Below are positions 11,950 through 52,469 of a stretch of DNA of 64,000 nucleotides, in pieces; the first letter of the stretch is position 1, and each line of letters begins with the position of its first letter. The stretch is taken from the NCBI GenBank assembly GCA_043228905.1, contig JBHGNT010000001.1, forward strand, positions 28,582,001-28,646,000, in the 5' to 3' direction. The DNA is from Azolla caroliniana (lineage: Eukaryota > Plantae > Polypodiophyta). A model generated the notes under the pieces. The model did no database searches. It worked only from the letters and a program-made list of their open reading frames with translations, and was not told the DNA's origin. Position numbers and translations under genes: made by a program.

Positions 11950-11952
11950 GTT

Positions 11953-22243: not shown

Positions 22244-22247
22244 GGCC

Positions 22248-25903: not shown

Positions 25904-28900
25904 TCACCGGTTGATGGGAGTATGCATGCGGTTTTCTATATGCCGGATCGCATCAACTGACATAATAAGGGTGTCATGTTGAAGAATGCTGTATACATTA
26001 AGCCCCTGCATAAAAAAATTCAATATTGTACGCTCATGTCAACTTTGGTGAGATTCCCTCACTCATATATGAATTATCTCATTTTATATAACAATGGCCT
26101 TATGCCCAAGCGGAATAATTTTAATCATAAAAAAGACACTCTAGAAATTGAAATATGAGATGTAGATAATATGACTTGTGACTTAGATGATCCAACTATT
26201 TCCAACATATAAATAAGACCAACCATGCAAGGTTTACACTATACATACCATTTTACACCGTTCCACAGCATAACTGTTGTGATTCCCATGCATCAAACAC
26301 ATGAGGCCATGTTGAACAACATTTGGGAATTATGGCAATTGCAAAAACAAAGATTTTTTTGTGGAGTTAAACCTACTGCTTTTTAAGCATGCAAATTTTC
26401 ACTCATAGCAGACCTATGTAATCAACCCAGATAAATGTTTCTTGTTTATATACCTTAGCTGGCAGCACATCAGCCTCATAGAGGTTGCTTGTTGATCTGC
26501 ATAAAAGTGTATTTACTTTGTCTGCTCCATCAACGATTAATACTCTTTTGCTTTGATCGAGTCCTTCAATGTACTTTGCCATTTCTTTAGTCTTATGTGA
26601 TGCTGGTGTAACATCATCAAGTACCAAAAGCTGCATATGAATAACAATGTTATACAAGATATAAGATATGTGGCTGATATCAAAACGTCTGCAGTAAAAT
26701 TAGAATGCCTGACCTTGCCTTCAGCAACTCTTGCTGAAAGTGCAATCTTTAATCCAAGCCTTCGGACTTTCTTTGGTAAATTATATGAATAGTCTCGAGG
26801 TTTAGGTCCGTGCATTGTAGCACCATGCCTAAACTGCCAGTATAGGAAAAACAAACAAAAATGAGCATTCATACAAAATGTGCTCATTTACATGTGAAAG
26901 TAGAGTTCACCTGTGGACCACGCAAACTTCCATGTCTAGCATTACCGGTACCTTTCTGTTTGTATGGCTTCTTACCTGTGCCACTGACTTCACTTATTGT
27001 CTTTGTTGAATGGGTACCCTGCAAGGTATCTACTTGTTATTATGATGCCTAAAACATCGCCAGGAGTATCCACTAACTAGTACTCAAAAGTTTGCAGATG
27101 TACAAACAAACTCAAAGACTTATTGACTGAAAGTTAAGCAGATTTCTTTATTAACCATATGTGGCAAAAAATATTGCTTTCAACGAACAGATTAAGAGCT
27201 ATGGGATATTTACTCAGCAAACCTAATTTTTTTGGAAGGATGAACGGAATGGTAATCATGATTATGTTTTTGCTATGTTCAATTCTAATATGTAATAAGA
27301 AAATGAAAATGCTTATGTTGCATGGTGTTGCAAAGAATGTAATGCATCAATCCTTAGAATCAACAAAAAAACCCATAATCCTACTGCTAACAAAAAAAGT
27401 GAAACAGTTTCCTAAAAGGCTAATTAAACAATGACAATATATATTGTAGTGCAATATTAATTTCTGATTCATTAGTCAAAGCTTTGCCTCATAACCTGAC
27501 GGCGCTTTGCTAGCTGCCAAACCACCACTCGATGAACAATATCTTTTCGAATTGGGACATCAAACACATCACCCGCCAGAACTGTTGTACCTTTCTCCTC
27601 ATTATTGAAATTAGTTACTTTGATCTCAATGTCATTGTAACAGCCTGAGCATAAGGTAAATCCATAACTTTAGAAGGTACAAGTGCCAAAACATTTCCTT
27701 TCCACCCTAGTTAGAAGCCATGTCTATTACATCTATGGACAATTTATACAACTTTCGTGGAAATTCTCTACCTTGTTTTTCTCCTTGAGCATGAGTCGCT
27801 CGTAGAAATGTAACACCTCTGTTTTGCATTGAAATCCATGGCTGTATTCATAGAAACATCAAAACTTAGAAGCTCAATCGTATCAAATCTTTTCTATATA
27901 CCATATGATTTTGTTAATGTCAAAGCAATAAAAATGAATTGGCAACTAAACAAGCTATAAACAATTCCACCCTTTCTCCCTCTTTATGGGCGTACATAAA
28001 TTTTTATGTACCCATTTGAGGAACATGGAGTCAAAATGAGTCTTGTGCTTGTTTTCCGTATTATGTTGTTGATCAGGCACACCAATGAGGTTGAGATGTT
28101 AAATTATATTTCTCCATCAGAGTAGCGGCACAACAGAGACATATAAAGCAAAACAGAGAATAAAACAGAGAAATATAAAGCAAACCAACCTCATTATTTA
28201 GCGGCACAACTCCATACTCCACGATACTTATAAAAACTAGAAAGCCAGTGGAGTTTCTGCCATTTAAAGCTTTACAAATACATATTCCAAGCAAGAAAAA
28301 TACCTTAAGGTTACCCCCCGAAGGCTGCACCGGCAATCAGATGCTTAACTCAGAAGAACCAGAAATATAAATAGTTCTCATCCTGTTGGGACATCTTAGA
28401 ATGGGCCCCATGAAGGCATTTTTGGGTATGATATACCATCCCTACCCAAGGATTGATCATTGTTGAACAAGTATGGAAATGATTCCTGAAAATTGCTCTC
28501 AGATTTCTGTAGCATCCAACAGACGACGATCTTTCCAACCAGAAATTGACAAAAAGTATGATTCCTCAATTTCTTCTCTTGATTATCAAGGATATGATCC
28601 GGTCCTAAGTCAACTACTAAAGGACTATACAATTCCACAGTTACCATCCACTATTATTATCTTCATCTAGTAGACACTTTTTAATTTACTAACATGAAAC
28701 ACAGAATGGAGCGACTTCTTGGTGGTAAATCATGATTATAAGAAACCTCTCTTATCATCTTTATGATCATACACATAGCACAATCTCTCAGAGGTAGATT
28801 GGGCAGCTTAATAACAGAAGCAATATACTGAGTGCACACACTTCTTTAAAGGATCTAGAGGCACACTTCTTGTTAGCATGGAAATTCCTAAGTAAGTTCT

Positions 28901-30396
28901 CAACTCTAACACATTACTTGGCGCCAGACAACTCAGAATTATGGAGACCTTTGAAGGATCCATTCTCACCCCCTCAGTGGATATTATGTGGTCTAAGTAT
29001 TCATCAACCTCTTGGCACAAGAAGGTTTTCTTATGATTGAAGTCCAATCTGCAGTGCTTTAAAACTCCAAAAACTATCAACAAATGATTTACGTGTTCAT
29101 TTAGGATTTTGCTAAAGATTAATATAACCATACACATAATTATACATTTAGTGTTTTACAATTGTATGCATGTTGTCCTAAATTATATTCAATGAAAAGA
29201 TCTGATAAGAGCTTACAGCTGTGTTCACACACAACCACGGGGCATGCTTTCATATAGTGGCCCCATGCATAAGAGTTACGATGGATGACCACCCTTCCCC
29301 TTGCCCACACAACATTACAGTCGTCTAATCACACCAACTCCTAGGGACATCTTAAAATGGCCCTCATGACCGTTTTGGTAATGACGTCAAATGTTTACTC
29401 TTCACTCATTTAAAAGGGAATAGTATCAGATCTGTTAAAGCTTTCGAATGCCTAGGCATTGATGTCCCTATCAACCATAACTGGGTTGACCAAGCTAATA
29501 GATCTTCGAATCCAAATGCAATGTCAATAATCTTCACATGTGTCAAATGCAAGAGGAGGAAGTATAACCCCATATCTATGGTAGGAGAATGCGATGGGAG
29601 AGGAGTAGCTTGAGCTAACGTCATCTACAGACACCTCCCTAATAATGAGCTCACGATGTGAGGATCTCACGCAACAATAACCATTCATGAACATCCAACA
29701 ATGCTTTCTACCATCAATTACCTACTGTACCAACCTCACACAACTTATCCGAGGTGGACAAAGGCCTGCAGCTTAGGAACATGTCTCGTCTCTATTTAGA
29801 GACAGAAGGGATCTTAATAAAGTACAAGCAATCATACGTGGCTGCTCTGGAGACTTCTTGAATCAAGTTTGTTGGATCTCCCAGATAATGTTTTTGGGTT
29901 TCTCAGGGCATTGAAATGTCAACATCATCTCTATTCCTCGAAGCAGGGTCACAAAATGTATTTTTTTTACACCACATACATCGAGGATATTAAAAATTTC
30001 CACCATTTCCAGAAATGTCTTTATTTTTGGGTAAATTCACACTTTGAGACATTAACAATCAACACATAAGGAGAGTATGTGTGTGTGTGTCTCTCTCCCT
30101 CCCTCTTTAAGATTTGAGACGGTGTCTGTTGTTAAATAATAGATCATAGAGTTTGTAAAGTTGGCACAATTAAGTTACATTGGAAAATAGCTTTAAACTT
30201 CATTTCATTTCTAATCCTTTCTTCTCCCTAGCTCGCTAAATTTCATTTCAAATCTTTCTCTTACCGGAGGAGAAAGCGACTTGTAACGATCGAAAACCTT
30301 CGGAAGAGCAGCATTTCGAGTAGCAGCAGCAGTAGTAGTAACCGCAGTAGATGAACATGGAACCTTGGCCAGGATTTTGAATAATCCTGCCCTCAT
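25904..30396 (-). CDS. RPL4: Mitochondrial ribosomal protein uL4m, copy A; exons 30396-30265, 27841-27772, 27644-27496, 27018-26911, 26833-26714, 26630-26454, 26005-25904 (285 aa)
   Basis: [29 protein letters not shown]|[36 protein letters not shown]|[12 protein letters not shown]...[17 protein letters not shown]|...|[13 protein letters not shown]...RMHTPINR* matches plant mitochondrial L4. All introns are GT-AG and phase-compatible. Exons 1-2 are less certain. Confidence 0.9.
28808..29137 (-). mobile_element. Ty3/gypsy RT fragment in RPL4 intron 1
   Basis: [14 protein letters not shown]...[19 protein letters not shown]...[13 protein letters not shown] is a degenerate gypsy RT C-terminal/connection region. 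Confidence 0.75.
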
Positions 30397-30779
30397 CTCT
30401 CTCTGACTCTGACCCTGTGAAGGAGGACGAGAAGAAGAAGAAGAAGAAGAAGAAGAAGCAGAGGAGGATGAATAGACCTACAAACGTAGTTAAGACAAAC
30501 AGAGAGGGTTTTATTTCTCAAGGAAAACCTCCAAGTTCTCTTAAATTACATATGTAAGCCTCGCTCAAAAAACCACAACAAAACCCCACATGAAGTGGAC
30601 TTTGTGGAGAATGCAGCACCAGCTTACACACTCAATCAAGCCTTTTGCTTATTTCCCCACATACCCCTATAGGGTAACATGGCCCTCTCCAATATAACCC
30701 TCCACTTCGTTTTCTAGTATTTCTCCAAATGCCTCTGTGCATTCACTTCCCTCCTCAACATGCCCTCTCCAACCAGAAG

Positions 30780-32200
30780 GGAAGACAATCTCATTAGTCA
30801 TTCTAAATTCATTCACTCAACCGACATGAGATGAAAAAATTGTGGTTGTTGTGAGCCCAAGTGTCCACCACCGCAACTTGAAATTATATGCACAAACGAA
30901 CGGATTCTTTCTACAACACAATCTCATTCTTATTGTAAATTCATCCAATAAACCAACATAGGCATTTGTGGCATGAACATGGAACTCTAACCATTCAACT
31001 ACAACCAAACATGAAAATATGCCAATCTCGGGCATACTTTTTGGAATATCTAAGCACGGGTGCAATATATCAAAAACGTATTCGTTACTTGTATGCTCAC
31101 AAAGCAAAGTTCATTTCGAGGAACTATTCCCTAGATCATCTGAGTCTTGTTCACTAAATCAAACAACAAGGTTCTTTCTAGAACAAAAGATAGTCACATT
31201 CATCATTTTAAATTCATTCAATCAAACAACATTATTGAAAATGTACTCGCGACTTGTATGCTCACAAAAAAATGCTTCATTTTGAGGGATGATCCTTGGA
31301 TTAACACAGTTTTGCTCATTAAATTAAAGAACAAGGTCCTTTCAAGACCAAAAGACAGTCTCATCAATCACCTTAAATTCATTCAATCAACCAATATGAG
31401 ATGAAGAGAGGTCGTTGTTTGGATAGTCTCAATCGTCGTTTTAAATTCATTCAATCAATCAACATTATTGGAAAAGGATTTGCTACTTGTATGCTCACAA
31501 AACAAGCTTCATTTCGAGAGACGATTCCATGGATAAACATAGTTTTGTTCATTAAATCAAACAGCAAGGTCCTTTCAAGAACAAAAGACAATCTCATCAA
31601 TCATTTTAAATTCGATCAACCAATATGACACAACCACAATGTCGAATTCTACCCATAGATGAGAATTCCACACATTATTCTTTCCAAGATAATTTCGTTA
31701 ATCCTTTTAAATTCATTGAATTAACCAACATGAGATCACGATGTGTGGTGTTTGGGATTTGAGCCTAGGTTTCCACGACCACAACGTGGAATTCCAACCT
31801 TACATGACAGTTCATTACATTAATCGTTGTCAACTCATTAAACAGACCAACGTGAGACAAAGAGATGTGGTGGTTGGCATTAAAGCATAAGTCTTCATGG
31901 CCACAACATATAATTCTAACCCCTAAACTACAACCACATATGACGCTCTAGGAATCAACAAAAGACAACCTCATGACCCATAGAAAACTTAATTGATCCA
32001 ACCAACCAAAGACGTGTTTGCTAGGATTCAAGCACAAGTTTCCCTAACCGTAACGTGTAATTCTAACCATTAAGAGTACAACCATACATGAAAACATCTT
32101 TAATTTTTATAAAGTCAACTCTTTGATCCTTAAATGAAAGAACAAGATTTCCAAAGGACAATCTCATTAACAATCATAAATTCATTTAATACACAAGCAT
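30780..32200. repeat. Degenerate multi-unit repeat array (shorter paralog at about 42380-43080)
   Basis: Recurrent motifs TAAATTCATTCAATCAACCAAC, CATGAGATGAAG, CTTGTATGCTCACAAA, AACAAGGTCCTTTCAAGA.CAAAAGACA and GTGGTTGTTAGGATTCAAGC. Confidence 0.7.
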
Positions 32201-33282
32201 TAGACTAAGTGGTGTTGTTCCTCAGATTCTACAAAGGGCTCAACCTGGACATTTCTCCAAGATTATGGCTAAGGGTCTAAGTAGCACCATGGTGGCAGAT
32301 AAAATAAATCATATCTCATTTGCATTCAGTTCCAAGATTCCATACTTCAAAGAGGCCATAAAGCTTCTCTTCTCAAATCAACAATTAAAGAATTTTTGAC
32401 ACCTTGCACCTCTATCCACATCGATTGGTCCCAAAAGTATGCTTATTCAGTCTTTTCAAACATCATTAGGGTATCATGGTTTTAAATCCCATTTCCTTTG
32501 AATTTTTTTTGTTGCAAGATGCATATTACAGGTCTCCATGTTGAGCATACTCTCAAGTAATTTCAAAAACATAAGTACTGTCCTGTGTATAAATAGGAGT
32601 AAATTATATCAATAAAAATAGCTAGGCCCCATCAAAGTATCTTTGGGATTCTTTACTTGGCATTACTTCTTATTCCTTTCTGTGGTTTTAGATTATCCCC
32701 AAGAGAATAAATTCGTATATCACTCCATCTCTATGATGCAAATGTCCATGTTGGAATAAAAACTAGCCTGCTATTCTCTGTCATGAAAATATCCATCTTG
32801 AAGCACAAAATTAATGAGTAAACAGAAATATATTTTGTCCAGATATAATCCAGTAATAAAAAAGACGCAACTACATTGACAGCAATGGATTGTAGCAATT
32901 AAAATCTAGAGCTCAAGTAGGATAGATAAGAAAATAGCTGACACTCCATGTCTAGAATGCATTGCTCAAATCCGTTTGGTAAAATGGTTCATATTTATTA
33001 AATCCAAGAGATGAAATGAATGCCAATTAACTTGGTAAGCTTTGCTACAAAGCTTTTGGCCACCTTTTCGAAACAACTATATCCACCAGCAACAGTCAAT
33101 TAAGATTAGAATACTATTCTTCCTAGTTACTAGAATAAATGATATTCAGAACAATCCAGTGCATGGAATGTGCTTGATCTTGGAAAAACCTGACACAGAT
33201 AAGAGTGGCATACTTTTAATCTAAATGTGTGTACGTACAGTTGTGGGCTCTATAAAATCACAAAGTTGTGACAAACTCTATT

Positions 33283-36200
33283 TCATAGCACATATGAGCT
33301 TATTTTCTTGTACTCAGGATCTGGTTTTCCTTCAGCATCAAGTATCAGATGGCGCTCAGCAACTGCACGCCAGTACTTCTCCTCGTATTCTTTTGGAGTC
33401 TTGATCTGCACACAAAAATCATAAAAAAGTTTAATCGTGTACACCTTGGCAGACTAGCACGGCGTTTAAAAAACAGAAATCTTCAATGTTACCATAGAAA
33501 GAAAGAAAGAAAGATATATTAACGTCTTTTAAGAGGCCAAAATGGCCTATAAGACCAAATAAGAGATTACATCCACAATTTATATAGAGAAACAAGATCG
33601 TTTATACAACCACAATTTGTGCATAGTGATGTGTATAAATTTCCACTCGAAAGAAAACAGAATCGCCCCTTTACACATCCATGGAGGAAAAGGAAATAAG
33701 CACAGAAGTCTTTCGTTTCAAAATTATGGGATATCCTTGCTAAAGAAAAGTAATTCAGTTGGCAGGGGTCACTCTTTATATGGATCGATTGTTCACACTG
33801 TTACTGGGGTAAAATCTCTTTCCCTTTCCAACATGGAATGTATAACATTAAAATGGTCATCTTCCAAAGGGGCATGCATTATTTCCAACATGGAATGTAT
33901 AACATTAAAATGGTCATCTTCCAAAGGGGCATGCATTATAGCATGTACGTTCTTGAAGGAACTGGCCACTCATAGGGTACCAATCTGTAACTGGTCCCAA
34001 GAAAGTAACCGCTGGTGACATTTTGCTACCGCCTTCCGTCAAGATTATTGATGATTCACAATACATAGTTACTATCATCCAACCAATATCTCTAAACATT
34101 GAATCGAAGATTGAGAATGAGGAGAAACTGTAAAAATGTGACGTTTTCTTACAGCTAAAAAAGCTCGTGAAAAAGTGATGCAATTTCCTTTGTTGTGTGG
34201 AAGGAATATGAAGTAAGATTGATAAGTGAAAAGAAAATAGAATTGCTACCATGTCTAAAAGAGTCAAGGCCACCTCAGGATTTACCTTAGTATGCTACTT
34301 ACAGATGTTAGAAATAAAAAGAGAAATAAAACACAACCGTTACCAGATCACCTAACTCTTTTCTTCAGAGGCCAACAGACCAAAAGAGACAGGGTATTCT
34401 TCATCTAGATTGGTAGTAAATTGCAGCTTGACCTGACTCCCATGGATCTTCCATTTCTGATCTAGGAACCAGAAGCTAAGGGCACCCCTTATATAGACCC
34501 AATTTATGTGAAGCTCAGGTAATTCAGAACATTTGATGTGAAGTTTAGAGGCCCTACCAAAGCTCAGAAAATGAAATATAAAAGACATTACTTAGAATAT
34601 GTTTCCTAAGTTACCTATAGCAATTGATAAATGTTAGCGCGAACCAATGAAGTAATCAATTCTGTTGCTGATTCATAAAACAAAACTCAGGCTCCGGTGG
34701 AGAAGCATGTGATATGAACATACACATGCACAACCATTCCTTTTGTTTTTATAAACATACCTAGGGTTGGAATATATGGTTGCTTTGCAAACCATTATTA
34801 AAGAGGGGAAACCATCAGTTATCTTATAGTTTATTTGGTTGAAAAACATCCACATTCGCAGAACCATTTCTTTTGTTTTTATAACATGCATAGGAATATG
34901 GTTGCTTTGCACTCGACAGATTCATCAACTCCATTACTTGAGAGGGAAAACCATCCGTTGTCTTATAGTTAAATTGGTTGAAATGTACCACTCATAACGG
35001 CAATAAAAATGTAGGTCTGAGCCCTACTAAACCTATTTACTTGCTATACATAACTCACTAGTAAAACTCAAGTGCACACAGTGATGTATGAATAATATAA
35101 GTGAGGATGCAAGTTTTTCCTTTTCAATGAACTCCGAAAGAACATACCATACGTTCACCTACATGCATAATCAATACCTAAGCAATATGCCCGTAATCAT
35201 TAAAGCTAGCTATTGAGACGCAATAAGATTGCAGAAAACCCAAAACATTTAGCTGTCTGCTCTGGTTTCTAAGAAGGCTTAGAAGGATGCTGAAAAATGC
35301 CACAAATAGCACTGTCGATGGACCATCATCAGTATACAGCTCTGTGGCTGTGAAGTTTTAGAGTGACCACGTGAACTTTTACATCTTATGTATAGCATCA
35401 CCAAGATTCAGGTCATGAATAGTTTAAGTCAAATCCTTACCTTACTTAAAGCCAAAAACATCGCTTTTACGGTATTATGAGGGTTAGAAGATCCAACAAG
35501 CTGCAATAATATAAAACCATCAGAAATGTAGAATCTTTCAGATACATGCACTGGTTAATGTGGGCAACAATATTGTTTTTAACTTACTTTTGACTTCACA
35601 CTTGTTATCCCGGCCAGAATCAGAATCCCTCTAACTATACCAGCTGCTCTGAACTTTCCTAATGTCCATTCTGGCCACAGTCGAACCTGTACAACAGAAT
35701 TTGCCTCACATCTCAAAGTTTTTGAATGTTTCGTAACAATTCATCCACTATTTACCTTAGTCTTTTCATACTTTGCTTCCACATAATGATATATTGTTTT
35801 GTCTTTGAACCTCTCGAAGTAGTATAAGTTGTTTAGTGCCTTGACGCTAGCCTGAAGAAATGTTAATATTAAAACAGAGCTGTGACTAATACCATAAATT
35901 TTATGCAGAAACATATTACCTCTCTGATTGCACGAGTTGCCTTTGGACCTTTTCCTTTGGCCCATCCAGCAAGTCCATCACCATTGCCACAGATCACTAG
36001 AGCAGTGTAGTTTGTTTCCCCTCCACCCTAAACTCACTTTATTTATGTTTACTAGTATTTGATGATATTGTATGTAATACGTGTATCAGGGCATATCTAC
36101 CTTTGTCACTTTGAAGGTTCGGTTCACATCTACCACCATAGTTCTGAATTTCTGTATAAATCGTATAGACACACTTCAGTTACTTCAAGAAATTATGTGA

Positions 36201-39200
36201 CGCATATGATTTGCAGAAATTTTTGCTGCAGCCCTGTATCTAAACAACTAACCCTTAGAAAAATCTCCCTTTGCCTAATTCTTAAATAGGCAAGCCTCTC
36301 AGCTGCATTTTCTGGCTTGTCCGCATCTTCCTCCTCAAAGTCCATCTTTTTGTAGCTGCCTCCATCACGACCAATACTTCCACTAAATTCATCTTTAGTC
36401 TCAATTCCAGCACCTTCCTTACCTTCTACACCTTTCCGTTCTCCAGGTTGGCCATATTCTCTGTCAAAATCATGAAGCGTCCGTGCCCTTGTCCTCCCTC
36501 CTCCACGATAATGGCGCACTCCATAGTCTAGAAAGCAATATCAAATCAGAGGATAGAATTGTGATCCTAAGTAATAAAATTCAAGTAGCACTAAATCACA
36601 CAATATTGGATACTGAAAGTTTGAAATTTCCTTCAAGTGATGTAATAAGAAGATATTCTTCAATTCTTTTTCTGTTGTTTAATATCGTATCGTTATCTTA
36701 TATATAACTCCTTCAATAAGGTGGAATGCCCAGAATTATACATGGTTGATTTGCGTAACCAGACTAAAAGCTTTAGCAGTCTCAAAAATAAGCTTACAAT
36801 ATACTTCTAGAAAGCCAAGAATTGAAAATTTGAATGCCTCACATGCAATTTCAAAAAAGAAAAACGTAGGCATGTCAGACACTGGATTATATTCCTGGCT
36901 ACCTACTTATCCAAGTAGATAGAAAACAATGCTGTCATTCTAATGTATTATTGGAAGCATTAGGGATGGTATCCCAAATTACCAACAATACATTTGATTT
37001 ATGTATTAATAATACATATCCAAAGCCCACTTCCAATTCTCTGTTGATACTGACTTCAGCTCAGAGTATTATGGAAGCCCAGAGTTGAACACTGAGATGG
37101 AAATCAAGAAACTCTAAGAATGGGCTATCTTATCTTTGAGTTTCAAATTCAACAATGCCTGTAATGTCATGCACAGAAAAGCTGCCTGGAGTCATAATAC
37201 CTTGACAACAAAGAATACATCAGGTGAATTCATACTCTCAACAATCTACCTTAAGAGCAGAAAAGAACCATGTTGGCATATGCTAGGGATGAATAGGAAA
37301 GGAGAAAACTGTGACATTTGTCTAAGCTCATGAATGGGTCATAACATGCTTTGTAGACATGGGAACAAGGGCTTACATAGAGTCTTCTGAATTCATAACG
37401 AGTAATAGATTCCAATGGGTGGTAGAATACCAATCAAAGTGCTAACTTGAAACTTGCTAATGAAGCTTCGAAATGGTGGTAGAATACCAAGCAAGTGCTA
37501 ATCTAGCTAAAACTTCACCATCACAACTAATAGGAGAGGATATAAGACAATAGAAACCACATGTGAAGCTTCCAGGTCGACTCATGCTGGTCTTGCAATT
37601 TTCAAGAGGCAGGAAGCAAATTAAGTCATTGTTAAATAATGCCATAAAAGAAAAACCAACAATACGAACTCATAGCACCACCTATGCTCCGTGCTCAAAA
37701 ACGTTACTCAAAATATTTGAAAGCACACATACATTGGAATGCGGTCAAATGATGATCCTTATCAACTATAACTGCAGAAAGACCAGAGGTTCTTGACTGC
37801 AACAAAAGACAGCATCAATAAGTTCATGTTAATAAAGAAAGTAAATCCACATTATTTATGAAAGTAAATCCTCATTATCTTCAGATAATTAACATAGCCC
37901 ATCTAATGAAAACATCTTTGGAACTATACAAAATGTACTTTATCCATCGCAAAGAAGACAAGGTCACTCATGCTAGTATTTGCATTGCAAGCATACTTAC
38001 TTTTGGAGAAATTCCGAAATATTAGAATACTTCTTTAATTCCCCAAATGCCCTTCAGTTTTCATTGATTTCCAAAATGCCCCCATCCAATCCAACAGAGA
38101 CAAGAAACGGGTTCATTATTGTTGTGCTCATAAACTCTCATAATTCTCAAATATCAGAGTTTGTCTTTACTACCCCAAATGCCCTTCAGTTTTTATTGAT
38201 TTCAAAATGTTCCTGTTCAACCCAATAGAGACGGGCACGGGGTCACCCTCTGTCTATTTAAAGCATTTGCCTATCTTTAACATGCACCTTACCTGTACAG
38301 ATAATTCACTATTGCATGCATGAAAGTTTTCCATTCTTTCCCCTTCATCCCCTTTGGACTGTGTCGAAAGCCTTCTAAAATGTACAAACCAGCAGTACAC
38401 TGGTTGTTCTTTACGCTATTTCTCCTCCATTATTGCCCGCAGAAAACAAGATGATCAATATTAGCATGTGTTTGGAGAACAAAGCTGCTTGTCCACCAAC
38501 AGTCTTCTTGTATTTTCAGCCCATTAACAGAATTAATGTTCATAATATTGCAGTAGGAGTTACCCATAACAAGATCGTCTAGTAATCATGCAAGATTATT
38601 GTGGGCTGATTTCTACTCCCTTTTGAATAGTTTCTTGATCCAATTATCTTGCTAGCAGAAGAAAAATTGTGTGCTGCCTGCTTTAATAATGCATCTATTC
38701 CTTCTTTGGCCACTGGGACCAATCCATTTTAGTATTGAACAGTTATAGATGAAGTGTATATGCATCCAGCCCTGCCAGTTTTAAGTTTTTTCAAGTTTTT
38801 CATATTGCCGTAAACTCAAAAGCTTCCCTTGCATTCCAAAAAACATGTTGGTTCACCGTGCATAATTGGCCACATATATCAATAAGTAAATCAGGGAAAA
38901 ATTGTCGATAAAGAGAATGTGTTGGTCATCCTATACATGCATGCAAGGATTGAACATATGCAGGTAGAAATCACTGCCTTTTGCCAGACCCGTATGATGA
39001 CATGCATGCATAGAAAGAAATCATGGTCAGTTGGCCAATGCAACCAACTTTGATATTCTATGGCACTAGTTTTCTGTATTATGTTGTTGATCAGGCAAAT
39101 CAATAAGGTTAAGCTGTTAAATTATATTTCTCCATCGGTCTATGAATGGAATGAATGGATGGTTATGTGTGAGCAGGTCATTATATGCCAGGTTCTTATA

Positions 39201-40923
39201 ACTATTTTCCTAAAGAAGTGCATTAAAGGGGTTTTGGATCCATGACGAGTATATTGAAAACATAATCACTTATGATACACAATAGATTTGTTTGCTTTGA
39301 CATGAATTCAACTTATAGCCTATATTTAATATTTAGTCAGATATATAATTAAGCACACAATAGTTCATACTTCATGTTTGGACACTGGTATCATGCTTCA
39401 TGCTTCATTTTAATATCAGTATGTTGTTATTTGTTGTGATATATTCTCATATCTAATCTAATTTTGTAAATTCCAGTTTTTCAACACTAATAAGTCTAGA
39501 TTGTTTAAATGCAAGATTTACATTATCTTTATGATGTATAATATATATAATACTAAAATTTAAACTTCTTTTAGGGATTTATGTTTGTCGTTTTATAAGG
39601 GAATCAAAATAGTACGTCCCCTATTTATTCACCAGTTTCAAAGTATAATATTACGGCTAGAAGACTGTCCCATTTTCCTTGACTCTAGTAGGGTGGAAAT
39701 CTTGAGTAAATATCCCTAATACAGGGTAATGCAATAAATTTCTCCACTTTATAACATCTATTGCAGTAAATTTTCTATTCTTTTGCTTCACACAATATCA
39801 TCTTACCAAGAGGTACAAGCTCTCAACCTATATTTAATCATACCTTTGCCACATTTGTTTAAAAATAACAATATGATTCAAAATGAAAATACTGACAGTC
39901 CAATTTCAAATGAGATTTTAGCTATAGGAAGTTCAAAAAGCTCACCGTTGCAAGGAAATCATTTTTATTCCTACTCAAACAACTGATCTGAGATCTTTCT
40001 TGCCTTGCAGAAAGCAGCAATCCCTATTTTGTCACCAAATGAGAACAAAAAAGAAATGAGAATAAATTTTAAAAATGTGTGCATACAACAAAATGCATAA
40101 AGAACTGCACTCTATTTAATTTCATTTACCTCTGTTGTACTGTTGGATACAATACATACTTGTTGGGTATAATATATACAATATATACTTTCTGTGAATA
40201 TAATACTCTAGCAATCAACATGGCTAAGAGCTTAACCATGGTGGTAAGAACTGTCAAAATCTAAAATTCAGCAGTCAGTACTGCATTATGAAGATTCGGC
40301 AATTGAAATGGTTCAGAGTTTCCAATACAATATATACTTTCTGTGAATATAATGCTCTAGAGATCAACGTGGCTAAGACCTAAACCATGGTGGTAAGCAC
40401 TGTCAAAATCTAAAATCAGCAGTTAGTACTGCATTATGGGGATGAGTGGTCATTGAAGTGTTTCACAGTTTCCAATAACAAGGAGTTTAAATACTCAGTC
40501 AACACACTTAGAGCTGCTACTCAACTTGGAAAATTGACACAGACACAGTCCGATCTGGAACTGAGGTTTGGGGAGGAAATATTTCAACAAGATTATTGAG
40601 TGAAACAGAGAAATATAAAGCAAACATACATCATTATTTAGCGGCACAACTCCATACTCCACAACACTTATAAAAACTAGAAAGCAATGGGGTTTCTTCC
40701 ATTTAAAGTTTTACAAAATACATATTTGAAGCAAGAAAAATGCCTTGAGGGAAACCTCGCTAAATGTAATATCAAATCTTTTTTTTACCTGAGGAGAAAG
40801 CGATTGGTTGCGGTCGAAAACCTTCGAAAGAGCAGCATTTTGGGTAGCAGTAGTAGTATTCGTAGTAACAGCAGTAGAGGAAGATGGAATCTTGGCCAGG
40901 ATTTTGAGTAATCCTGCCCTCAT
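33283..40923 (-). CDS. RPS5: Mitochondrial ribosomal protein uS5m; exons 40923-40789, 37796-37733, 36527-36253, 36151-36101, 36027-35920, 35851-35756, 35686-35588, 35500-35441, 33405-33283 (336 aa)
   Basis: [17 protein letters not shown]|[27 protein letters not shown]...|[15 protein letters not shown]...|VRLWP...[12 protein letters not shown]|[18 protein letters not shown]|[10 protein letters not shown] is the S5 domain of plant mitochondrial type. All introns are GT-AG with consistent phases. The first two exons are inferred from splice sites and phase only. Confidence 0.85.
33826..33940. repeat. 57-bp tandem duplication in the last RPS5 intron
   Basis: TTCCAACATGGAATGTATAACATTAAAATGGTCATCTTCCAAAGGGGCATGCATTAT occurs twice. 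Confidence 0.9.
38290..38830 (-). mobile_element. Degenerate LINE (RTE-like) reverse transcriptase fragment
   Basis: Broken minus-strand frames give [33 protein letters not shown] and KAFDTV, matching the non-LTR RT motif GQAGFR...IDH...CFVDFRKAFDTV. Confidence 0.6.
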
Positions 40924-41135
40924 CTCTCTCTTTCGCTACTCTCTCGGACTCAGACCCTGTGAAGAAGAAGAGGAAGAAGAAGAGGAAGAAGAAACAGAGG
41001 ATGAATACACACCTACACACGTAAGTAATTAAGAGAGAAACCTCCAAACTCTCTTAAATTACATATGTAGCCCCCTCCAAAAACACAACAAAACCCCACA
41101 TGCACCGGCTTACACACTCAATCGAGCCTTTTGCT

Positions 41136-41195
<60 letters not shown>

Positions 41196-42217
41196 GCGTC
41201 CGGAGATACTAGCTCTTGGTATAACACTGTCGTAAGTTGGTTACTTGCAAATGGCATAGACATTAATAACCTACCTCCCCTTAAGCAATCATGGGACTGA
41301 TCAAACTTTAATCTCTCATGAGGACCATAATAAAGTAGTACGCCAAGAAATATGGCAATTTTACACTCGATATAAATGGACCACCCCACAAGAACCACGG
41401 AACACTTCATGCACTTCTCTAAGTTAGGTTTTATTACACGACCAAAATATCTAGATACATTCTTATCAAATGCATTAAGGGTGGCCATTGGACAACTTAG
41501 GATATCATCTCACCAACTTGAGATTGAGAATGGTCGTGCTAATAGAGTTCCTAGAGAGGAAAGGCTATCTAGGTTATGTCGCATAGAGATAGAGAATGAG
41601 TATCACTTTACATGCAAGTGTCCAACTTATGCCGAGATAAGGCAAAATACTAAGACATACTAGGACCATCTCCAAACTATTAGATACCCCAGATATAAAG
41701 AGACTAGGTAAGTATATTGTATCACTAAAACAACATAGGGAGAATAAACTACAAAGTGTTAACCATAACCATTATAATATTCACCAACATGTAACTAATA
41801 TAAATTTTCAGGAACAAGGGGAGACGATGAATGTGGACACACCTACACCACTCGGCCTCTCTCTTGATGAAGTAGAAATGCAAAGAACAACCAAACACCC
41901 TCGAATGTCGGGCTTCAAAGCAACTTGGCGTGGAGTACAAACAATTAAGAAGATAAGGGAACGTGAGCTACGCCGCCTAGAAGCTATGGTTGGGGTACCT
42001 TTTACATTGGGGCCACGGGCCACATCCCACGTTGAAACCCTTTGACCTCCCGCTTCTTTTCGAGAGACTTGGATGGAAATGAAACTAGGCTTAGTATAAA
42101 GTCATGTTTTTTACTATAACTCTTTAGCTTAAGTTCTATTTTATTATTTTTTACTTTCGATGTTTTTGTTGTAAACCAATTGTCTCATGAGCCAAATTTG
42201 GTCTTAGAAGACGTTAA

Positions 42218-42219
<2 letters not shown>
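41196..42219 (+). mobile_element. 5'-truncated LINE 3' end between (TC)n/(TA)n and (CT)n tracts
   Basis: ORF 41376-41663 has LRISSHQLEIENGR...PREERLSRLC...ENEYHFTCKCPTYAEIR, a C-terminal Cys/His domain of non-LTR ORF2. Absent from the paralogous promoter at about 30650. Confidence 0.75.
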
Positions 42220-42258
<39 letters not shown>

Positions 42259-44254
42259 TCGTCATTGCCCCATGATGATGTCATCTCCCCAATATAACCC
42301 TCTACTTAGTTTTCCAGTATTTCTCCAAATGCCACTATGCATTCGGTTCCCTCCTCAACATGCCCTCTCCAAACAAAAGGGAATACAATCTCATTCAACA
42401 TTGTAAATTCATTCAATTAGCCAACATGGGTTGAACATGTGTGGTTGTTAGGATTCAAGCCCAAGTCTCCACGACCACAATCTCAATCTTATTGGGAATT
42501 CATTCAACAACCCAACATGAGATGAAGATGTGTGGTTGTTAGGATTCAAGCATAGGTCTCCATGGCCACTGGCCAAAACATCGAAGTCTAACCATTAAAC
42601 TACAACCAAACATGAAAATATGCCTATCTCAAACGTACTTTTTGGAATATCTAACCACGAATACAAATTTAGAAGCAATATTCGTTGCTTGTGTGCTCGC
42701 AAAGCAGAGTTCATTTCGAGTTTTGTTCAGTAAATCAAACAACACGGTTCTTTCTAGAAAAAAGGACAATCACATTCATCATTTTTAATTCATTCAATCG
42801 ACCAACATTATTAAAAATGTATTCACTACTTGTATGCTTGCAAACCATGCTTCATTTTCATGGATGATTCCATGGATTAGCATTGTTCCGTTCATTATAA
42901 TCAAACAACAAGGTCCTTTCAAGAACAAAAGACAATCACATCAATCACCTTAAATTCATTGAATCAACCAATATGAGATGAAGATATGTGATTGTTGGGA
43001 TAGTCTCATTCATTGTTTTTAATTTATTCACTCGACCAACATTATTGAAAAAGGATTCGCTACTTGTATACTCATTTAAGACACGAGCATTAGACTACGA
43101 GGTGTGGTTTCTGCGATTCTACCAATGGCTCAACCTGGAAATTTCTCCAAGGTTTTGGCTAATGGTCCAAGTACCACCACGTGGATTTGCAATCCTAGAT
43201 ATATCGAGTCATTACTCAATCACAATGGCAGATAAAATAAATAAATATCTCATTTGCATTCAGTTCCAAGATTCCATTCTTCAAAGAGGCCATAAAACTT
43301 CTCTTCTCAAATCAACAATTAAAGAATTTTTGACAGCTTGCTCCTCTATCCACATCAATTGGTCCAAAAATGAGGCTTATTCAGTCTTTCCAAACATCAT
43401 TAGGCTACCATGGTTTTGAATCCCATTCCCTTTGAATTTTTTTAGTTGCAAGATGCACATTACAGGTCTCCATGTTGAGCATACTCTCAAGTAATTTCAA
43501 AAAAATAGGTAATGTCCTGTGTACAAATAGAAATAAATTATATCAATAAAAATAGCTAGGCCCCATCAAAGTATCTTTGGGATTCTTTACTTGGCATTAC
43601 GTCTTATTCCTTTCTGTGGTTTTATATTATCCCAAAAAAATAAATTTGTATATCATAGTCTCCATCTCTATGATGCAAATGTCCATGTTGGAATAAAAAC
43701 TAGCTTGCTATTCTCTGTCATGAAATATCCATCTTGAAGCACAAAATTAATGAGTAAACAGAAATATGTTTTGTCCACATATAATCCAATAATAAAAAAG
43801 ACGCAACTACATTGACAGCAATGGATTGTAGCAATTAAAATCTAGAGCTCAAGTGGGATACATGAGAAAATAGCTGACGCTCAATGTCTAGAATGCATTG
43901 CTCAAATCCATTTTGTAAAATGGTTCATATTTATTAAATCCAAGCGATGAAATGAATGCCAATTAACTTGGTAAGCTTTGCGACAACGCAAAGTCATCAC
44001 CTAACCTATGCCACATTAAGCTTTTGGTCACCTTTTCGAAACAACTACATATATCCACCAGCAACAGTCAATTAAGATTAGAATACTTTTCTTCCTAGTT
44101 ACTAGAATAAATGATATTCAGAACAATCCAGTGCATGGAATGTGATTGATCTTGGAAAAACCTGACACAGATAAGAGTGGCATACTTTTTATCTAAATGT
44201 GTGTACGTATAGTTGTGGGCTCTATAAAATCGCAAAGTTATGACAAACTCTATT

Positions 44255-44372
44255 TCATAGCACATATGAGCTTATTTTCTTGTACTCAGGATTTGGTTTT
44301 CCTTTAGCATCAAGTATTAGATGGCGCTCAACAACTGCACGCCAGTACTTCGTATTCTTTTGGAGTCTTGAT
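44255..44372 (-). pseudogene. RPS5: Orphan duplicate of the RPS5 last exon with a 5-nt frameshifting deletion
   Basis: Copy of 33283-33405 but 118 nt instead of 123. Upstream RPS5 homology stops at about 45021, within the intron. Confidence 0.9.
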
Positions 44373-45229
44373 CTGCACACAAAAATCATAAAAAAGTTTA
44401 ATCGTGTACTTTAAAACCTTGGGAGACTAGCACAACTTTTTAAAAACAGAAATCTTCAATGTTACCATAGAGAAACAAGATCATTTATACAACCACAATT
44501 TGTGCATAGTGATGTGTATAAATTTCCACTCGAAAGAGAACAGAGTAGCCCCTTAACACATCCGTGGCGGAAAAAGAAAATAAGCGCACAAATGTTTTTC
44601 GTTTCAAAATTATGGAATATCATTGCTAAAGAAAAGTATTTCAGTTGGCAGGGATCACTCTTTATTTGGATCGATTGTTCACATAAAGGGAGGAGAAATT
44701 ATAAAAAAGTGATTTTTTCTTACAACTAAAAATGCTCGTGAAAAAGTGATGCAATTTGCTTTGTTGTGTGGAAGGAATATGAAGTAAGCGTGATAAGTGA
44801 AAAGAAAATAGAATTGCTACCATGTCTAAAAGAGTCAAGGCTACCTCTGGATTCACCTTAGTATGATACTTACATATGTTACAAATAAAGAGAGAAATTA
44901 AACACAAAACATTAGAATATTATCTTAGTAAAAATGGACACAAATACCAGATCACCTAACTCTTTTTCTCAGAGGCCAACAGACCAAAAGAAACTGGGTA
45001 TTCTTCACCTAAATTGGTAGTCAATACAAATTGGCATAAATTAATTCTTGTTTGAAAGACTTTGTTAATTTAGTTTCGTGTCTACTTCTATGCATCTAGA
45101 TCATATTGCATTTGCACAATTTGGTTCGTGGTTCACATAATTTAACTCAATTTTCTTTATCTCCATCTCTGTTTTATCTAAGTTCTCTTGTATTAATGCA
45201 AATTGGTTATTGCATACATGAGTTGGCAT

Positions 45230-45482
45230 TGGTCAGCCCAATAAATCTTTGGATTCTATGGAAACAACGGTGTAGACGGGTCTTCTCCAACCAAACCGTG
45301 CAACCAATAGTGTTAATGCAAGAGATATGGAGTGACGTGGTAGCCACTCTAAAGAGCCAATATGATGACCTCCACATAAGATGGACCTATTGTGTCCCTA
45401 CAGGGATTTGTATATACTAATCTCATATGTAAAATTTTATAACTAATGGAAGGAGTTTTTTTGGGGGGAATTATTATTATTA
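45230..45482 (+). mobile_element. Short LINE 3' fragment
   Basis: NLWILWKQRCRRVFSNQ...QEIWSDVVATLKSQY resembles the 19050-19499 peptide. (TTA)n tail; flanked by TTGGCAT (45223-45229, 45483-45489); absent from the paralogous site near 23230. Confidence 0.65.
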
Positions 45483-50500: not shown

Positions 50501-52469
50501 CTCTCTCTTTCTCTACTCTCTCTACTCTACCCTGTGAAGAAGAAGAAGAAGAAGAAGAAGAAGAGGAAACACAGGAGGATAAATAGACCTAGACAGTTAA
50601 TTAAGAGAGACGATTTTATTTCTCGAGGGAAACCTCCAAACTCTCTTAAATCGCATATGTAGGGCCCCACAAAAAACACACATGAAGACTTCTTCAACAG
50701 AATGAAGGCATTATGACAACTTCCAAGTGGTAAATCTCATATAAAAGTCTTCCAAAGAAACCAATATCTAATGGATAGCCAATGACAATGGAATTCTTAT
50801 GTAATGGAGCCAATATCTACCAATAGCTTTGTTCTTTATACCTGATTCATTAAAAATGCAATGAGAAGCAGAGCACACACCTGAGAAACAACTGTTTTGA
50901 AATGTTTCTATTTGATGTAAATTCGAGGTTCAACATTCTGCCTGTAATTATGAGAGGGAAAACCTCCCTAAGACCACACAATGGACTCTGCATTGATATG
51001 ATCTTGTTTTGGGGCTCTCCGACAGCAAATCCACTTTGTATACTGAAAGAATTACAAGCCCCACTTGAGATGTTTTTCATTTAAGAAATTATGTTCACGA
51101 CGTTATTGATCCTTTTCTTGGCACCCCAAAGTAGGCTATGTATTCGCCATTTCCATTTTATTTTATAGTATGCCTCAAATATCCCACTTGATTCTTTTTT
51201 AAGCCTCTACTTGTTTGTTAAGTTGCTAACAATCAAACAATACTTTAGGTTGCATGGACTATGCTAATTGGGTGTGGCATTGCATCCTGTTTAGGCTCCT
51301 AATTGTAGGTTTCTACTTGTTCGTAGATTCAATAAGTGTGTTATCTATGTGACTAATGACATGGATATGTTCTTGTTTTTCCTCCTCCCTTTTCCCTTTT
51401 TCCTAAACATTCAATTCATGACTATTGCAAGGTGGAGTTGAACCAATAGCCCACGATGTTGTTCATCTTCATTATTGTGAGTCATAAGCCTCGTGGCTCT
51501 CGATGTTGCCACCTTCCAATAAAGGGAAACCTTTTGACATTGCAGTCAAGATAGATAATTGCTTATGTAATAAAAGGTATGGACATTATGGATCGTGAAT
51601 GTATAATTAAAAGATGTGATTATCTTTTTGGAGATGCTTTTATGGATCAAGTAAACAATCAACATGGTGCATAGGTCTTGCATTTTCAATCCATTGATAA
51701 AACATCTTGATGGTCACCAATGGAGTAATTGAGTCGTGACCTCGATGGGAAATGGCATTACCATGATTAAGCTCTATATACAATGCTTACTAACATCGTG
51801 ATTAGAGCAGGTGGGATATATGTATCCATTGTTTGAGATCCTAATTACATATAGAGGCATTCAGTGGTATGTGTCCATAGTCACTAAAAATTATATTCAA
51901 AATTGAAGTGGACAATCAATCCATGAACATTAAATGATAAAAATCCACATGTCCCGAAGTTCAGAAACATTGAGAGTAATCCTGGATTGCTTTGCAAATG
52001 CATGTAACATGATGCGGAGGAATGACATCAAACAGATGTGACCCTTATGTAAGGGGGCATTTTTGAACGCTTGTGAAACGACTATTCATAAAACTTTATA
52101 ACATAAATAACATGAAGATCTAGCCCATGTATGCATAGAACGTGAATTATTCAAAGGAAATAAATCCCATCACGAGGATTGATTCATTTGTGATCCTCGA
52201 ATGCAACATTGTACTATGACCCATGTCGATGATGGATCCATTTTCGGGAACATGTGAAGGAAGACACTTTAGAAATTGACCAACAACACACTCAGACCAA
52301 CCTCGTGGTCATTGGTGTATTCAGGAACACGGTATCTAAAGGCATCAACCTTCTTAGGCAGGGGATATGCTCGATGGGCGAAAGAAGGAGAAGCCAAAAT
52401 GTGAAAGAAGGAGATGGTGGCGGTGGGACGGGACAAGAGGAGACAATGATGGCCATGAGGTGGCGGCCA

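What the first reader, a model, noticed from the sequence alone, without database searches (positions are those of the whole stretch)
28045..40923. Two unrelated mitoribosomal genes (RPL4 and RPS5) start with paralogous copies of one promoter + presequence exon + intron-1 module
Seen: three copies of the same first exon on the minus strand. 30396-30265 ([44 protein letters not shown]) precedes the RPL4 body. 40923-40789 ([45 protein letters not shown]) precedes the RPS5 body. 50500-50369 precedes the RPL4 pseudogene. All share the (CTT)n-rich leader and a phase-0 GT donor. RPS5 intron 1 is homologous to RPL4 intron 1 down to a sharp breakpoint at about 39065 (= about 28045, some 200 bp from the RPL4 exon-2 acceptor). 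Joining this exon gives a stop-free 336-aa RPS5. Established: the peptide is Arg/Lys/Ser/Thr/Ala-rich and nearly acid-free like mitochondrial presequences, and presequence recruitment by duplication or shared exons is known (e.g. sdh2-rps14 in grasses). Inference: RPS5 is a chimeric gene that replaced its own promoter and presequence with those of its neighbour RPL4, putting a large- and a small-subunit protein under paralogous regulatory/import modules.
Basis: partly seen in the sequence, partly recalled or inferred. Interest (0 to 1): 0.8.

Follow-up and report, generated by a model that had tools for sequence, protein, structure and literature searches.

The report
Fern uS5m gene borrowed neighbour's start
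In this fern, a local duplication gave the gene for mitochondrial ribosomal protein S5 a copy of the promoter and first exon of its neighbour, the L4 gene, and RNA shows the hybrid gene is transcribed and spliced in frame. This is a well-documented example of a known way of acquiring an import signal.

Summary
Three minus-strand copies of one promoter plus first-exon module (ATGs at 30396, 40923 and 50500) are about 83% identical to each other.

The main interpretation is supported. Spliced contigs from three public runs join the 40923 exon to the RPS5 (uS5m) body. The RNA-supported gene has 10 exons and a stop-free 362-residue frame, not 336. Its last exon lies at 33405-33283.

The direction of transfer is probably RPL4 to RPS5:
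- Other ferns' uS5m match only from GVR.YRGGG (exon 4) onward, and their N-termini are unlike this exon.
- The region between the genes, which holds RPS5's last exon, is itself duplicated (30685-34421 and 42285-45025). Two head-to-tail junctions (28048/39066 and 23054/34421) have the form that overlapping tandem duplications leave.

Open points:
- Mitochondrial import by the peptide is inferred from composition only.
- RPL4's own exon 1-2 splice was not tested.
- The ancestral RPS5 5' end is not in the window.
- One contig hints at a second uS5m transcript.
- A fourth copy of the module exists in a relative.

This is a new member of a known kind: presequence capture by duplication, producing a chimeric gene.

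The parts
40924..41139 (-). Promoter-proximal region and 5' leader of the chimeric RPS5 (copy B). It holds a near-invariant block (41068-41038) and a (CTT)n tract ending in CTTCACAGGGT (40964-40954).
   Evidence: Homologous to 30397-30653 (A) and 50501-50682 (C). The transcription start was not mapped; read laying skipped the repeat at 40957-41000.
40789..40923 (-). RPS5 exon 1 (E1B): 45 codons from the ATG, RPL4-derived putative presequence.
   Evidence: RNA contigs cover 40788-40919, and the joint 40788|40022 (GT..AG) is seen in X1, X3 and X4.
39946..40023 (-). RPS5 exon 2: 78 bases, 26 codons, phase 0-0.
   Evidence: Joints 40022|40788 and 37796|39946. Stop-free in frame. The neighbouring 40204-40054 matches the intron of module L010.
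39066..39136 (-). Last block of RPL4-intron-1 homology in RPS5. Duplication junction J1 lies at 39066/39065, inside RPS5 intron 2.
   Evidence: 90% identical to 28048-28118; there is no similarity beyond it.
37733..37796 (-). RPS5 exon 3: 64 bases, ends in phase 1. First exon on the RPS5 side of the junction.
   Evidence: Joints 37796|39946 and 36527|37733. 62 of 64 bases are identical in the relative's contig L002. No significant similarity to other ferns' N-termini.
36253..36527 (-). RPS5 exon 4. Homology to other ferns' uS5m begins here ([10 protein letters not shown]...).
   Evidence: tblastn hits of five fern uS5m start at 36534-36522.
35441..36151 (-). RPS5 exons 5-9 (36151-36101, 36027-35920, 35851-35756, 35686-35588, 35500-35441), encoding the S5 N- and C-terminal domains.
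   Evidence: All joints are GT..AG in X1, X3 and X4. Pfam PF00333 and PF03719 match. Best PDB matches are uS5m of 6xyw and 9evs.
33283..33405 (-). RPS5 exon 10: 40 codons plus the stop. It lies inside the duplicated segment X.
   Evidence: The 30 loose letters beyond 35441 in X1, X3 and X4 match 33376-33405 exactly. The C-terminus aligns with uS5m 9evs_D and with the fern uS5m proteins.
30685..34421 (-). Segment X: the 3' part of RPS5 intron 9, exon 10, the 3' flank and the region upstream of the RPL4 promoter.
   Evidence: Collinear with X' at 42285-45025, 77-91% identical.
30397..30653 (-). RPL4 promoter-proximal region and leader (copy A).
30265..30396 (-). RPL4 exon 1 (E1A): 44 codons.
   Evidence: Its sequence appears as a loose end of an X1 contig, so it is transcribed. 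The splice to exon 2 was not tested.
25904..27841 (-). RPL4 (uL4m) exons 2-7: 27841-27772, 27644-27496, 27018-26911, 26833-26714, 26630-26454 and 26005-25904. With exon 1 this gives 285 residues.
   Evidence: Canonical splice sites and a continuous frame. Pfam PF00573 is matched in order across the exons. Best PDB match is uL4m 6xyw_Ad at E 4e-19.
28048..28310 (-). RPL4 intron-1 blocks shared with RPS5 (28310-28163 and 28118-28048). J1 counterpart at 28048.
45065..50682 (-). Copy C: promoter, exon 1 (50500-50369, TGA at codon 4) and an RPL4 pseudogene body (5' half of exon 2 missing, TGA in exon 3).
42285..45025 (-). Segment X', the copy of X, with a decayed copy of RPS5 exon 10 (about 44410-44255). 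Junction J2 lies between 45025 and 45065.
   Evidence: 45-53% identity to fern uS5m C-termini, against 63-83% for the real exon 10.
41140..42284 (.). A 1.1-kb insertion between X' and the copy B promoter, flanked by (GA)n runs.
   Evidence: The ORF at 41376-41663 had no Pfam hit.

Best explanation
RPS5 (uS5m) and RPL4 (uL4m) lay head to tail on the minus strand, with RPS5 upstream. Overlapping local duplications placed a copy of RPL4's promoter, exon 1 and the first part of intron 1 in front of the RPS5 body. One breakpoint was in RPL4 intron 1 (28048) and the other in the 5' part of RPS5 (39066). A tandem duplication across two same-strand neighbours makes exactly this kind of hybrid: the 5' end of the downstream gene joined to the 3' part of the upstream gene.

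The hybrid is now transcribed from the copied promoter. The copied exon-1 donor splices to a 78-base exon recruited from the copied intron, then to the RPS5 exons. This gives a 362-residue uS5m whose first 71 residues come from RPL4-type DNA.

Shown: the copies, the junctions, the spliced in-frame transcript, and the foreignness of the N-terminus to fern uS5m.

Inferred: RPL4 as the donor, the order of the duplications, that the 45-residue peptide directs mitochondrial import, and that the two genes share regulation.
For: - Three module copies, about 83% identical to each other.
- Nine GT..AG joints in contigs of three runs from three studies. These include one 408-base contig with 0-2 mismatches that spans exon 1 to exon 4.
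- The frame is stop-free from ATG 40923 to the stop at 33283.
- No contig lies between 37837 and 39826 in the RNA runs (the one at 39946-40022 is exon 2), so no alternative first exon is seen.
- Seven fern uS5m sequences align only from exon 4 onward. Their N-termini show no similarity to exons 1-3 (z < 1.3 against shuffles), and the window holds no relic of them.
- X and X' are collinear with the A and B promoters, and X holds the real last exon of RPS5. The two genes were therefore neighbours before the duplication.
- Junctions J1 (28048|39066) and J2 (23054|34421, seen as 45065|45025) are both head-to-tail.
- Chimeras of this form arising from tandem duplications are documented (PMC5460883).
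- Family assignment comes from Pfam and PDB matches.
- dN/dS for exon 1, A against B, is 0.64, against 0.8-1.15 for comparisons with the pseudogene copy.
- Exons are 97.4-98.0% and introns 93.5% identical to a relative's contigs.
Against: - The simple two-duplication model predicts an ancestral RPS5 5' part and more copies upstream of copy C. The window instead shows an unrelated ORP-like gene there, so further deletions must be assumed.
- The three copies are equidistant, so the order of events cannot be read from divergence.
- RPL4 as the original owner rests on parsimony. No uL4m orthologue N-terminus was compared.
- A fourth module type exists (L010), so a third gene could be the source.
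- Targeting is untested, and the helical hydrophobic moment of residues 2-12 is no better than shuffles.
- Contigs cannot show transcript starts or rare isoforms.
Confidence: 0.75

Rival explanations
1. The module is native to RPS5, and RPL4 (with its pseudogene) captured it.
For: The breakpoint 28048/39066 is symmetrical in itself, and the three copies are equidistant.
Against: - Fern uS5m N-termini from at least five other sources are unlike the exon.
- A duplication across same-strand neighbours joins the 5' end of the downstream gene (RPL4) to the body of the upstream gene (RPS5), not the reverse.
- X-promoter collinearity in both copies fits one event only if RPL4 is the donor.
- Two RPL4-type bodies carry the module, against one RPS5 body.
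Confidence: 0.06
2. The promoter plus presequence exon is a multi-copy cassette from a third gene or a mobile unit, and both RPL4 and RPS5 received it.
For: A fourth intact module (L010, about 82% identical to A, B and C, with open frame and donor kept) sits on a 781-base contig of unknown downstream gene. X4 has an exon-1-like contig with 12 mismatches in 131 bases.
Against: L010's intron carries pieces that match the introns of both A and B. It therefore looks like one more copy of the same RPL4-type unit, for instance a whole-genome duplicate. No terminal repeats or transposase lie around the module.
Confidence: 0.1
3. The hybrid is an expressed but redundant duplicate, and a second uS5m gene with a different 5' part supplies the ribosome.
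For: X1 contig 3 (344 bases, depth 5) matches exon 4 with 10 mismatches in 119 bases, then runs on for 225 bases unlike the window.
Against: The hybrid's contigs are deeper (20-29) and its frame is intact over 10 exons. Its exons are more conserved than its introns against the relative. Only 30 letters of the other transcript could be seen, and they line up loosely (about 16 of 25) with the spliced exon 3-4 sequence. It may therefore be a diverged copy of the same architecture.
Confidence: 0.15
4. Assembly or transcript artefact: exon 1 and the RPS5 body are not really linked.
For: ENA contig L009 is an exact mosaic of window copies A and B, so chimeric contigs do occur in related data. No independent DNA contig spans 39066.
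Against: Three runs from three studies give the same four 5' joints with canonical splice sites and copy-B-specific bases. A relative's contig also links a B-type exon 1 to RPS5 exons 3-6.
Confidence: 0.02

Closest known systems
Presequence acquisition by duplication of an existing mitochondrial targeting signal: rice rps11-1 from atp2, Arabidopsis sdh3 from hsp70, carrot rps10 from hsp22 (Kadowaki et al. 1996 and others, as summarised in PMC2631504; sdh3/chaperonin in conifers, PMC8317393)
   Same: The N-terminal exon of one nuclear gene for a mitochondrial protein is copied on to another such gene, here a ribosomal protein gene.
   Different: The known cases concern genes freshly moved from the mitochondrial genome that had no presequence. 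Land-plant mitochondrial genomes do not encode uS5m, as far as I know, so it is an old nuclear gene that should already have had one. Other ferns' uS5m carry N-terminal extensions. This is therefore a swap rather than a first acquisition. The donor is the adjacent gene, the promoter came along, and the duplication junctions are still visible.
sdh2-rps14 in grasses: one presequence exon shared by alternative splicing (PMC1543663; PMC2631504)
   Same: Two unrelated mitochondrial proteins start with the same targeting exon.
   Different: In the grasses, one physical exon and one transcript serve both proteins. Here each gene has its own diverged copy (84% identical) and its own promoter copy. No shared transcript was seen.
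[quoted passage not shown]
   Same: The 5' end and promoter of one gene are joined to the 3' part of its neighbour, with a head-to-tail junction inside introns.
   Different: This case is old (about 17% divergence), probably kept by selection, in a fern, and it changes a targeting peptide. At least two overlapping duplications plus deletions are needed to explain it.

Membership tests
uS5m (mitochondrial ribosomal protein S5) | S5 N-terminal (dsRBD-like) and C-terminal domains | tested here: met
   Exon 6 matches PF00333 (33.5 bits, cut-off 27.1). Exon 9 matches PF03719 (23.7 bits, cut-off 21.5).
uS5m (mitochondrial ribosomal protein S5) | Closer to mitochondrial than to plastid or cytosolic S5 | tested here: met
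   Best PDB matches are 6xyw_Bd (At1g64880, Arabidopsis mitoribosome) and 9evs_D uS5m. The C-terminal exon aligns with the uS5m-specific tail. The scores are modest because single short exons were searched.
uS5m (mitochondrial ribosomal protein S5) | Imported into mitochondria and present in the small subunit | not testable with these tools
   No localisation predictor or proteome data were available.
uL4m (mitochondrial ribosomal protein L4) | L4/L1 family domain, closest to mitochondrial L4 | tested here: met
   PF00573 is matched in order by five exons. 6xyw_Ad uL4m matches at E 4e-19 and 9gyt/9evs uL4m at 2e-18, against E of 3e-4 or weaker for the other L4 chains listed.
Presequence capture by duplication of an existing targeting exon | Paralogous N-terminal exons on two unrelated genes for mitochondrial proteins | tested here: met
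   E1A and E1B are 84% identical in DNA, in the same phase with the same donor.
Presequence capture by duplication of an existing targeting exon | The captured exon is expressed as the N-terminus of the recipient | tested here: met
   Spliced contigs and a continuous frame.
Presequence capture by duplication of an existing targeting exon | The peptide is a functional mitochondrial targeting signal | tested here: inconclusive
   The composition fits: 5-7 Arg+Lys, 1 acidic residue and 9-13 Ser+Thr in 44-45 residues. The helical moment is not above shuffles. No import assay was done.
Presequence capture by duplication of an existing targeting exon | Donor and recipient can be told apart | tested here: inconclusive
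   The recipient side is shown: the exon is foreign to fern uS5m. The donor side rests on junction logic only, because no uL4m orthologue was compared.
Chimeric gene from tandem duplication | Head-to-tail junction joining the 5' part of the downstream gene to the 3' part of the upstream gene, with the parental flank duplicated | tested here: met
   J1 at 28048|39066, with X/X' and promoter collinearity.
Chimeric gene from tandem duplication | Both parental genes still present beside the chimera | tested here: not met
   RPL4 is present. No ancestral RPS5 5' part or second body is in the window. Extra deletions or another locus must be assumed.

The most novel reading that the evidence does not exclude
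The promoter plus presequence exon is a portable cassette that has spread to several mitoribosomal genes in this fern lineage. At least four copies exist: A, B and C in the window and D on L010. If so, small- and large-subunit proteins are wired to one regulatory and import module as a way to keep their supply in step.
Probability: 0.12. Interest if true: 0.75.

Novelty: new member of a known kind. Interest (0 to 1): 0.5.

Why it matters
Most known cases of borrowed presequences concern genes newly arrived from the mitochondrial genome. Here an old nuclear gene exchanged its N-terminus and promoter for those of its neighbour. The donor, the junctions, a dead by-product (the pseudogene) and the working transcript all sit in one 30-kb stretch.

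That makes this a readable example of three things:
- How targeting peptides turn over.
- How intron sequence becomes coding (the 78-base exon).
- How two subunits of one machine can come under related promoters.

It also offers matched natural constructs: the same presequence family on two cargo proteins, plus a relative's shorter version of the exon. These could be used in import and co-expression tests in ferns.

Tried and rejected
- Word search with RPS5 exon 4 and with the exon-1 ORF found only short ORFs called on low-coverage ENA contigs. No annotated full-length protein of this species turned up.
- L009 looked like a relative's RPL4 5' end. It is an exact mosaic of window copies A and B joined to unrelated DNA, so I set it aside as a probable chimera.
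- I first read the window's intron end upstream of 36527 as a decayed ancestral exon, from the look-alike [10 protein letters not shown] withdrew this. It is a polypyrimidine-tract resemblance, and the loose letters of the second uS5m contig fit the spliced exon 3-4 sequence better.
- My by-eye alignment of exon 3 with RSNNFAV...AFPE of other ferns is not significant (z < 1).
- tblastn with fern uS5m N-termini found no relic exon in the window.
- The hydrophobic-moment test for an amphipathic helix was not significant.
- Adiantum genomic DNA could not be fetched because the file was too large, so I did not compare intron positions in other ferns.
- Pfam found nothing in exons 1-3, in the ORF of the 41140-42284 insertion, or in the ORF of the RPL4 intron.
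Full report
**1. What is in the sequence**

The ATGs are at 30396, 40923 and 50500, and the frames run 44, 45 and 44 codons. Each frame ends at a GT donor in phase 0, and each is preceded by a (CTT)n tract ending in CTTCACAGGGT.

A three-way alignment of promoter plus exon gives 83.6%, 82.8% and 83.0% identity. The numbers of unique changes are almost equal at 27, 23 and 26, so the three copies are equidistant. A 31-base block (41068-41038 in copy B, 30555-30525 in A, 50660-50630 in C) is nearly invariant.

Copy C has TGA at codon 4. Its RPL4 body lacks the 5' half of exon 2 and has TGA in exon 3, so it is a pseudogene.

**2. The larger pattern**

Self-comparison of the window shows that more than the exon is repeated. 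On the minus strand the order is:
- promoter/E1C and the RPL4 pseudogene (50682-45065)
- X' (45025-42285)
- a 1.1-kb insertion flanked by (GA)n
- promoter/E1B (41139-40789)
- RPL4-type intron sequence down to 39066
- the RPS5 body
- X (34421-30685)
- promoter/E1A (30653-30265)
- RPL4 (down to 23054)

X and X' are collinear and 77-91% identical. The cluster lies between a CYTH-domain gene (22242-22862, plus strand) and an oxysterol-binding-protein-like gene (from 53088, plus strand).

**3. RNA evidence**

A search for sequencing runs found four holders with small word shares, as expected for exons only. I laid them on 35250-41200. Runs X1, X3 and X4 come from three studies and three organism labels. 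All three give spliced contigs, and every joint is GT..AG on the minus strand.

The RNA-supported model is:
- Exon 1 ends at 40789.
- Then an exon at 40023-39946.
- Then 37796-37733, 36527-36253, 36151-36101, 36027-35920, 35851-35756, 35686-35588 and 35500-35441.
- The contigs continue beyond 35441 with 30 letters that match 33376-33405 exactly, which places the last exon at 33405-33283.

One X1 contig of 408 bases, with 0-2 mismatches, runs from exon 4 through exons 3 and 2 into exon 1. Copy B's exon 1 is therefore part of RPS5 transcripts.

A 78-base exon lies between. Contigs drop rare isoforms, so an exon-skipping form cannot be excluded.

No contig lies between 37837 and 39826 in the three RNA runs; the only one between exons 1 and 3, at 39946-40022, is exon 2. 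There is thus no sign of another first exon.

I translated each exon in its phase without joining them for any search. The frame is open from ATG 40923 to the stop at 33283 and has 362 residues.

**4. What the two genes are**

Exon by exon, the RPS5 pieces match Pfam Ribosomal_S5 and Ribosomal_S5_C. The RPL4 pieces match Ribosomal_L4 in order along the profile.

Among solved structures the best matches are plant mitoribosome chains. For S5 these are uS5m At1g64880 (6xyw) and 9evs_D. For L4 they are uL4m 6xyw_Ad (E 4e-19) and 9gyt/9evs.

My RPL4 model has seven exons, canonical splice sites and 285 residues. Its exon 1-2 joint was not tested, because the single read-laying run went to RPS5. An X1 contig carrying E1A sequence shows only that exon 1 of RPL4 is transcribed.

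**5. Which gene owned the exon**

The HMMER search of the representative library with exon 4 returned one full-length uS5m, P0005 (307 residues, from a transcriptome). Using it as the query for the word search gave fern uS5m sequences from several sources, among them Ceratopteris richardii and Adiantum nelumboides. That the best named hits are ferns fits the scan's earlier notes that this genome is a fern.

All of these proteins share the motif GVR(Y/F/H)YRGGG and everything after it with the window's exon 4 onward. Upstream they carry N-termini such as MATLAR...RHALTR, MAMGRSKAYRY... or MTGRSQGY....

Local alignment of exons 1, 2 and 3 against these N-termini scores no better than shuffled peptides. 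tblastn of the five fern proteins against the whole window finds no relic of such an exon. The exon is therefore foreign to uS5m.

That RPL4 is the donor follows from structure. X holds the real last exon of RPS5 and runs without a break into the RPL4 promoter, so the two genes were same-strand neighbours before any duplication. X' runs in the same way into the copy B promoter. A tandem duplication from a point in the 5' part of RPS5 to a point in RPL4 intron 1 would create three things in one step: X', promoter/E1B, and the junction 28048|39066.

A second head-to-tail junction joins the RPL4 3' flank to X. It corresponds to 23054|34421 and is seen at 45065|45025. It accounts for the pseudogene.

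Such chimeras are a known product of tandem duplications that ignore gene boundaries (PMC5460883).

The donor side therefore remains an inference.

**6. What does not fit**

Either order of the two duplications predicts an ancestral RPS5 5' part, and further copies, upstream of copy C. The window has none, so later deletions or a more complex path are needed. Because the three copies are equidistant, the order of events cannot be dated.

**7. Relatives**

ENA contigs at about 93% identity give a glimpse of a relative.
- L002 (the same record as L019) carries a B-type exon 1. It has 39 codons, an open frame, an intact donor, and the same deletion junction as copy B. Then follow a 470-base intron and RPS5 exons 3 to 6.
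- L002 lacks 40722-39520, which includes the 78-base exon, and 39231-37866, which includes the junction.
- L020, from another sample of the same study, carries X-like sequence, the promoter, the same exon 1 (429 bases identical to L002), a 640-base intron, and RPL4 exons 2-5.
- After a tandem repeat, L002 and L020 differ by about 15%, so they represent two loci.

This suggests that the relative also has the exon in front of both genes. In the relative, exon 1 would splice directly to the 37796-type exon, which keeps the frame. These are 2x-coverage contigs, however. Another contig of the same study, L009, is an exact mosaic of window copies A and B, so I treat the linkage in the relative as suggestive only.

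L020 and the fourth module L010 do show that sequences found only in copy B's intron within the window (39465-39142 and 40204-40054) are of the RPL4-intron-1 type. The 78-base exon was therefore recruited from the copied intron.

Against the relative, RPS5 exons are 97.4-98.0% identical and introns 93.5%.

**8. The peptide**

Exon 1 has 5-7 basic residues, one acidic residue and 9-13 Ser/Thr, which is the usual make-up of plant mitochondrial presequences. dN/dS between A and B is 0.64 (6 synonymous and 11 non-synonymous changes, a small sample). Comparisons with the pseudogene copy give 0.8-1.15.

A helical hydrophobic-moment test on residues 2-12 was not better than shuffles. Function as an import signal is plausible but untested.

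**9. A possible second uS5m transcript**

X1 contig 3 matches exon 4 with 10 mismatches in 119 bases and then continues for 225 bases unlike the window. Only 30 of those letters are shown. They line up loosely with the spliced exon 3-4 sequence. Whether that copy starts with an MRAGL-type exon or an older one is unknown. It bears on whether the hybrid replaced the older gene or only supplements it.

**10. Comparison with known cases**

Copying of existing targeting signals on to mitochondrial ribosomal protein genes is established. Examples are rps11/atp2, rps10/hsp22 and sdh3/hsp70 (PMC2631504; PMC8317393). Sharing of one presequence exon by alternative splicing is also established, in sdh2-rps14 (PMC1543663).

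The present case differs in three ways:
- The recipient is an old nuclear gene that exchanged an existing N-terminus.
- The donor is the adjacent gene and its promoter came along.
- The junctions and by-products are still visible.

A literature search for such a swap between mitoribosomal genes found nothing closer. I class this as a new member of a known kind.

**11. Verdict**

- Its functional claims (import, co-regulation, replacement) remain inferences.
- Interest is moderate.

Noticed in passing
window 6724-7549 and 11952-12777: Two 826-base direct repeats, 99.9% identical and 5.2 kb apart, plus a 346-base tandem copy at 7289-7982. This looks like the LTR pair of a young LTR retrotransposon.
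   Followed up: no
window 22242-22862 (+): An intron-less 206-residue ORF with a CYTH domain (PF01928, E 1.5e-17), convergent with the 3' end of RPL4.
   Followed up: partly
window 53088-58000 (+): A multi-exon gene with PH-domain-like and oxysterol-binding-protein-like peptides (for example [16 protein letters not shown]), divergent from the pseudogene copy's promoter. Judged by eye only.
   Followed up: no
L009 (ENA ERZ1034427, 964 bases): This contig is an exact mosaic of window copies A, B and A, with switches at shared runs as short as 13 bases, joined to unrelated GC-rich DNA. It is either a library or assembly chimera, or a gene-conversion allele.
   Followed up: partly
L010 (ENA ERZ27227291, 781 bases): A fourth promoter plus exon-1 module with an open 45-codon frame and intact donor, about 82% identical to A, B and C. 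The gene behind it is unknown.
   Followed up: partly
window 28163-28310 / 40603-40750 and 28048-28118 / 39066-39136: The two intron blocks shared by RPL4 and RPS5 are 90% identical, while promoter plus exon are 84%. This may reflect later gene conversion between the two introns.
   Followed up: no
window 30397-30420 (RPL4 leader): An X1 contig with the RPL4 leader ends about 22 bases upstream of the ATG, directly followed by Illumina adapter. The transcript may start there, which would put the (CTT)n tract in the core promoter rather than in the leader.
   Followed up: no
window 28811-29137 (-), inside RPL4 intron 1: A 109-residue ORF that looks by eye like a reverse-transcriptase or RNase H fragment of a retroelement. 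Pfam gave no hit.
   Followed up: partly
window 31068-31628 and 42764-42976: Short tandem repeats of about 160-230 bases inside X and X', 77-84% identical.
   Followed up: no
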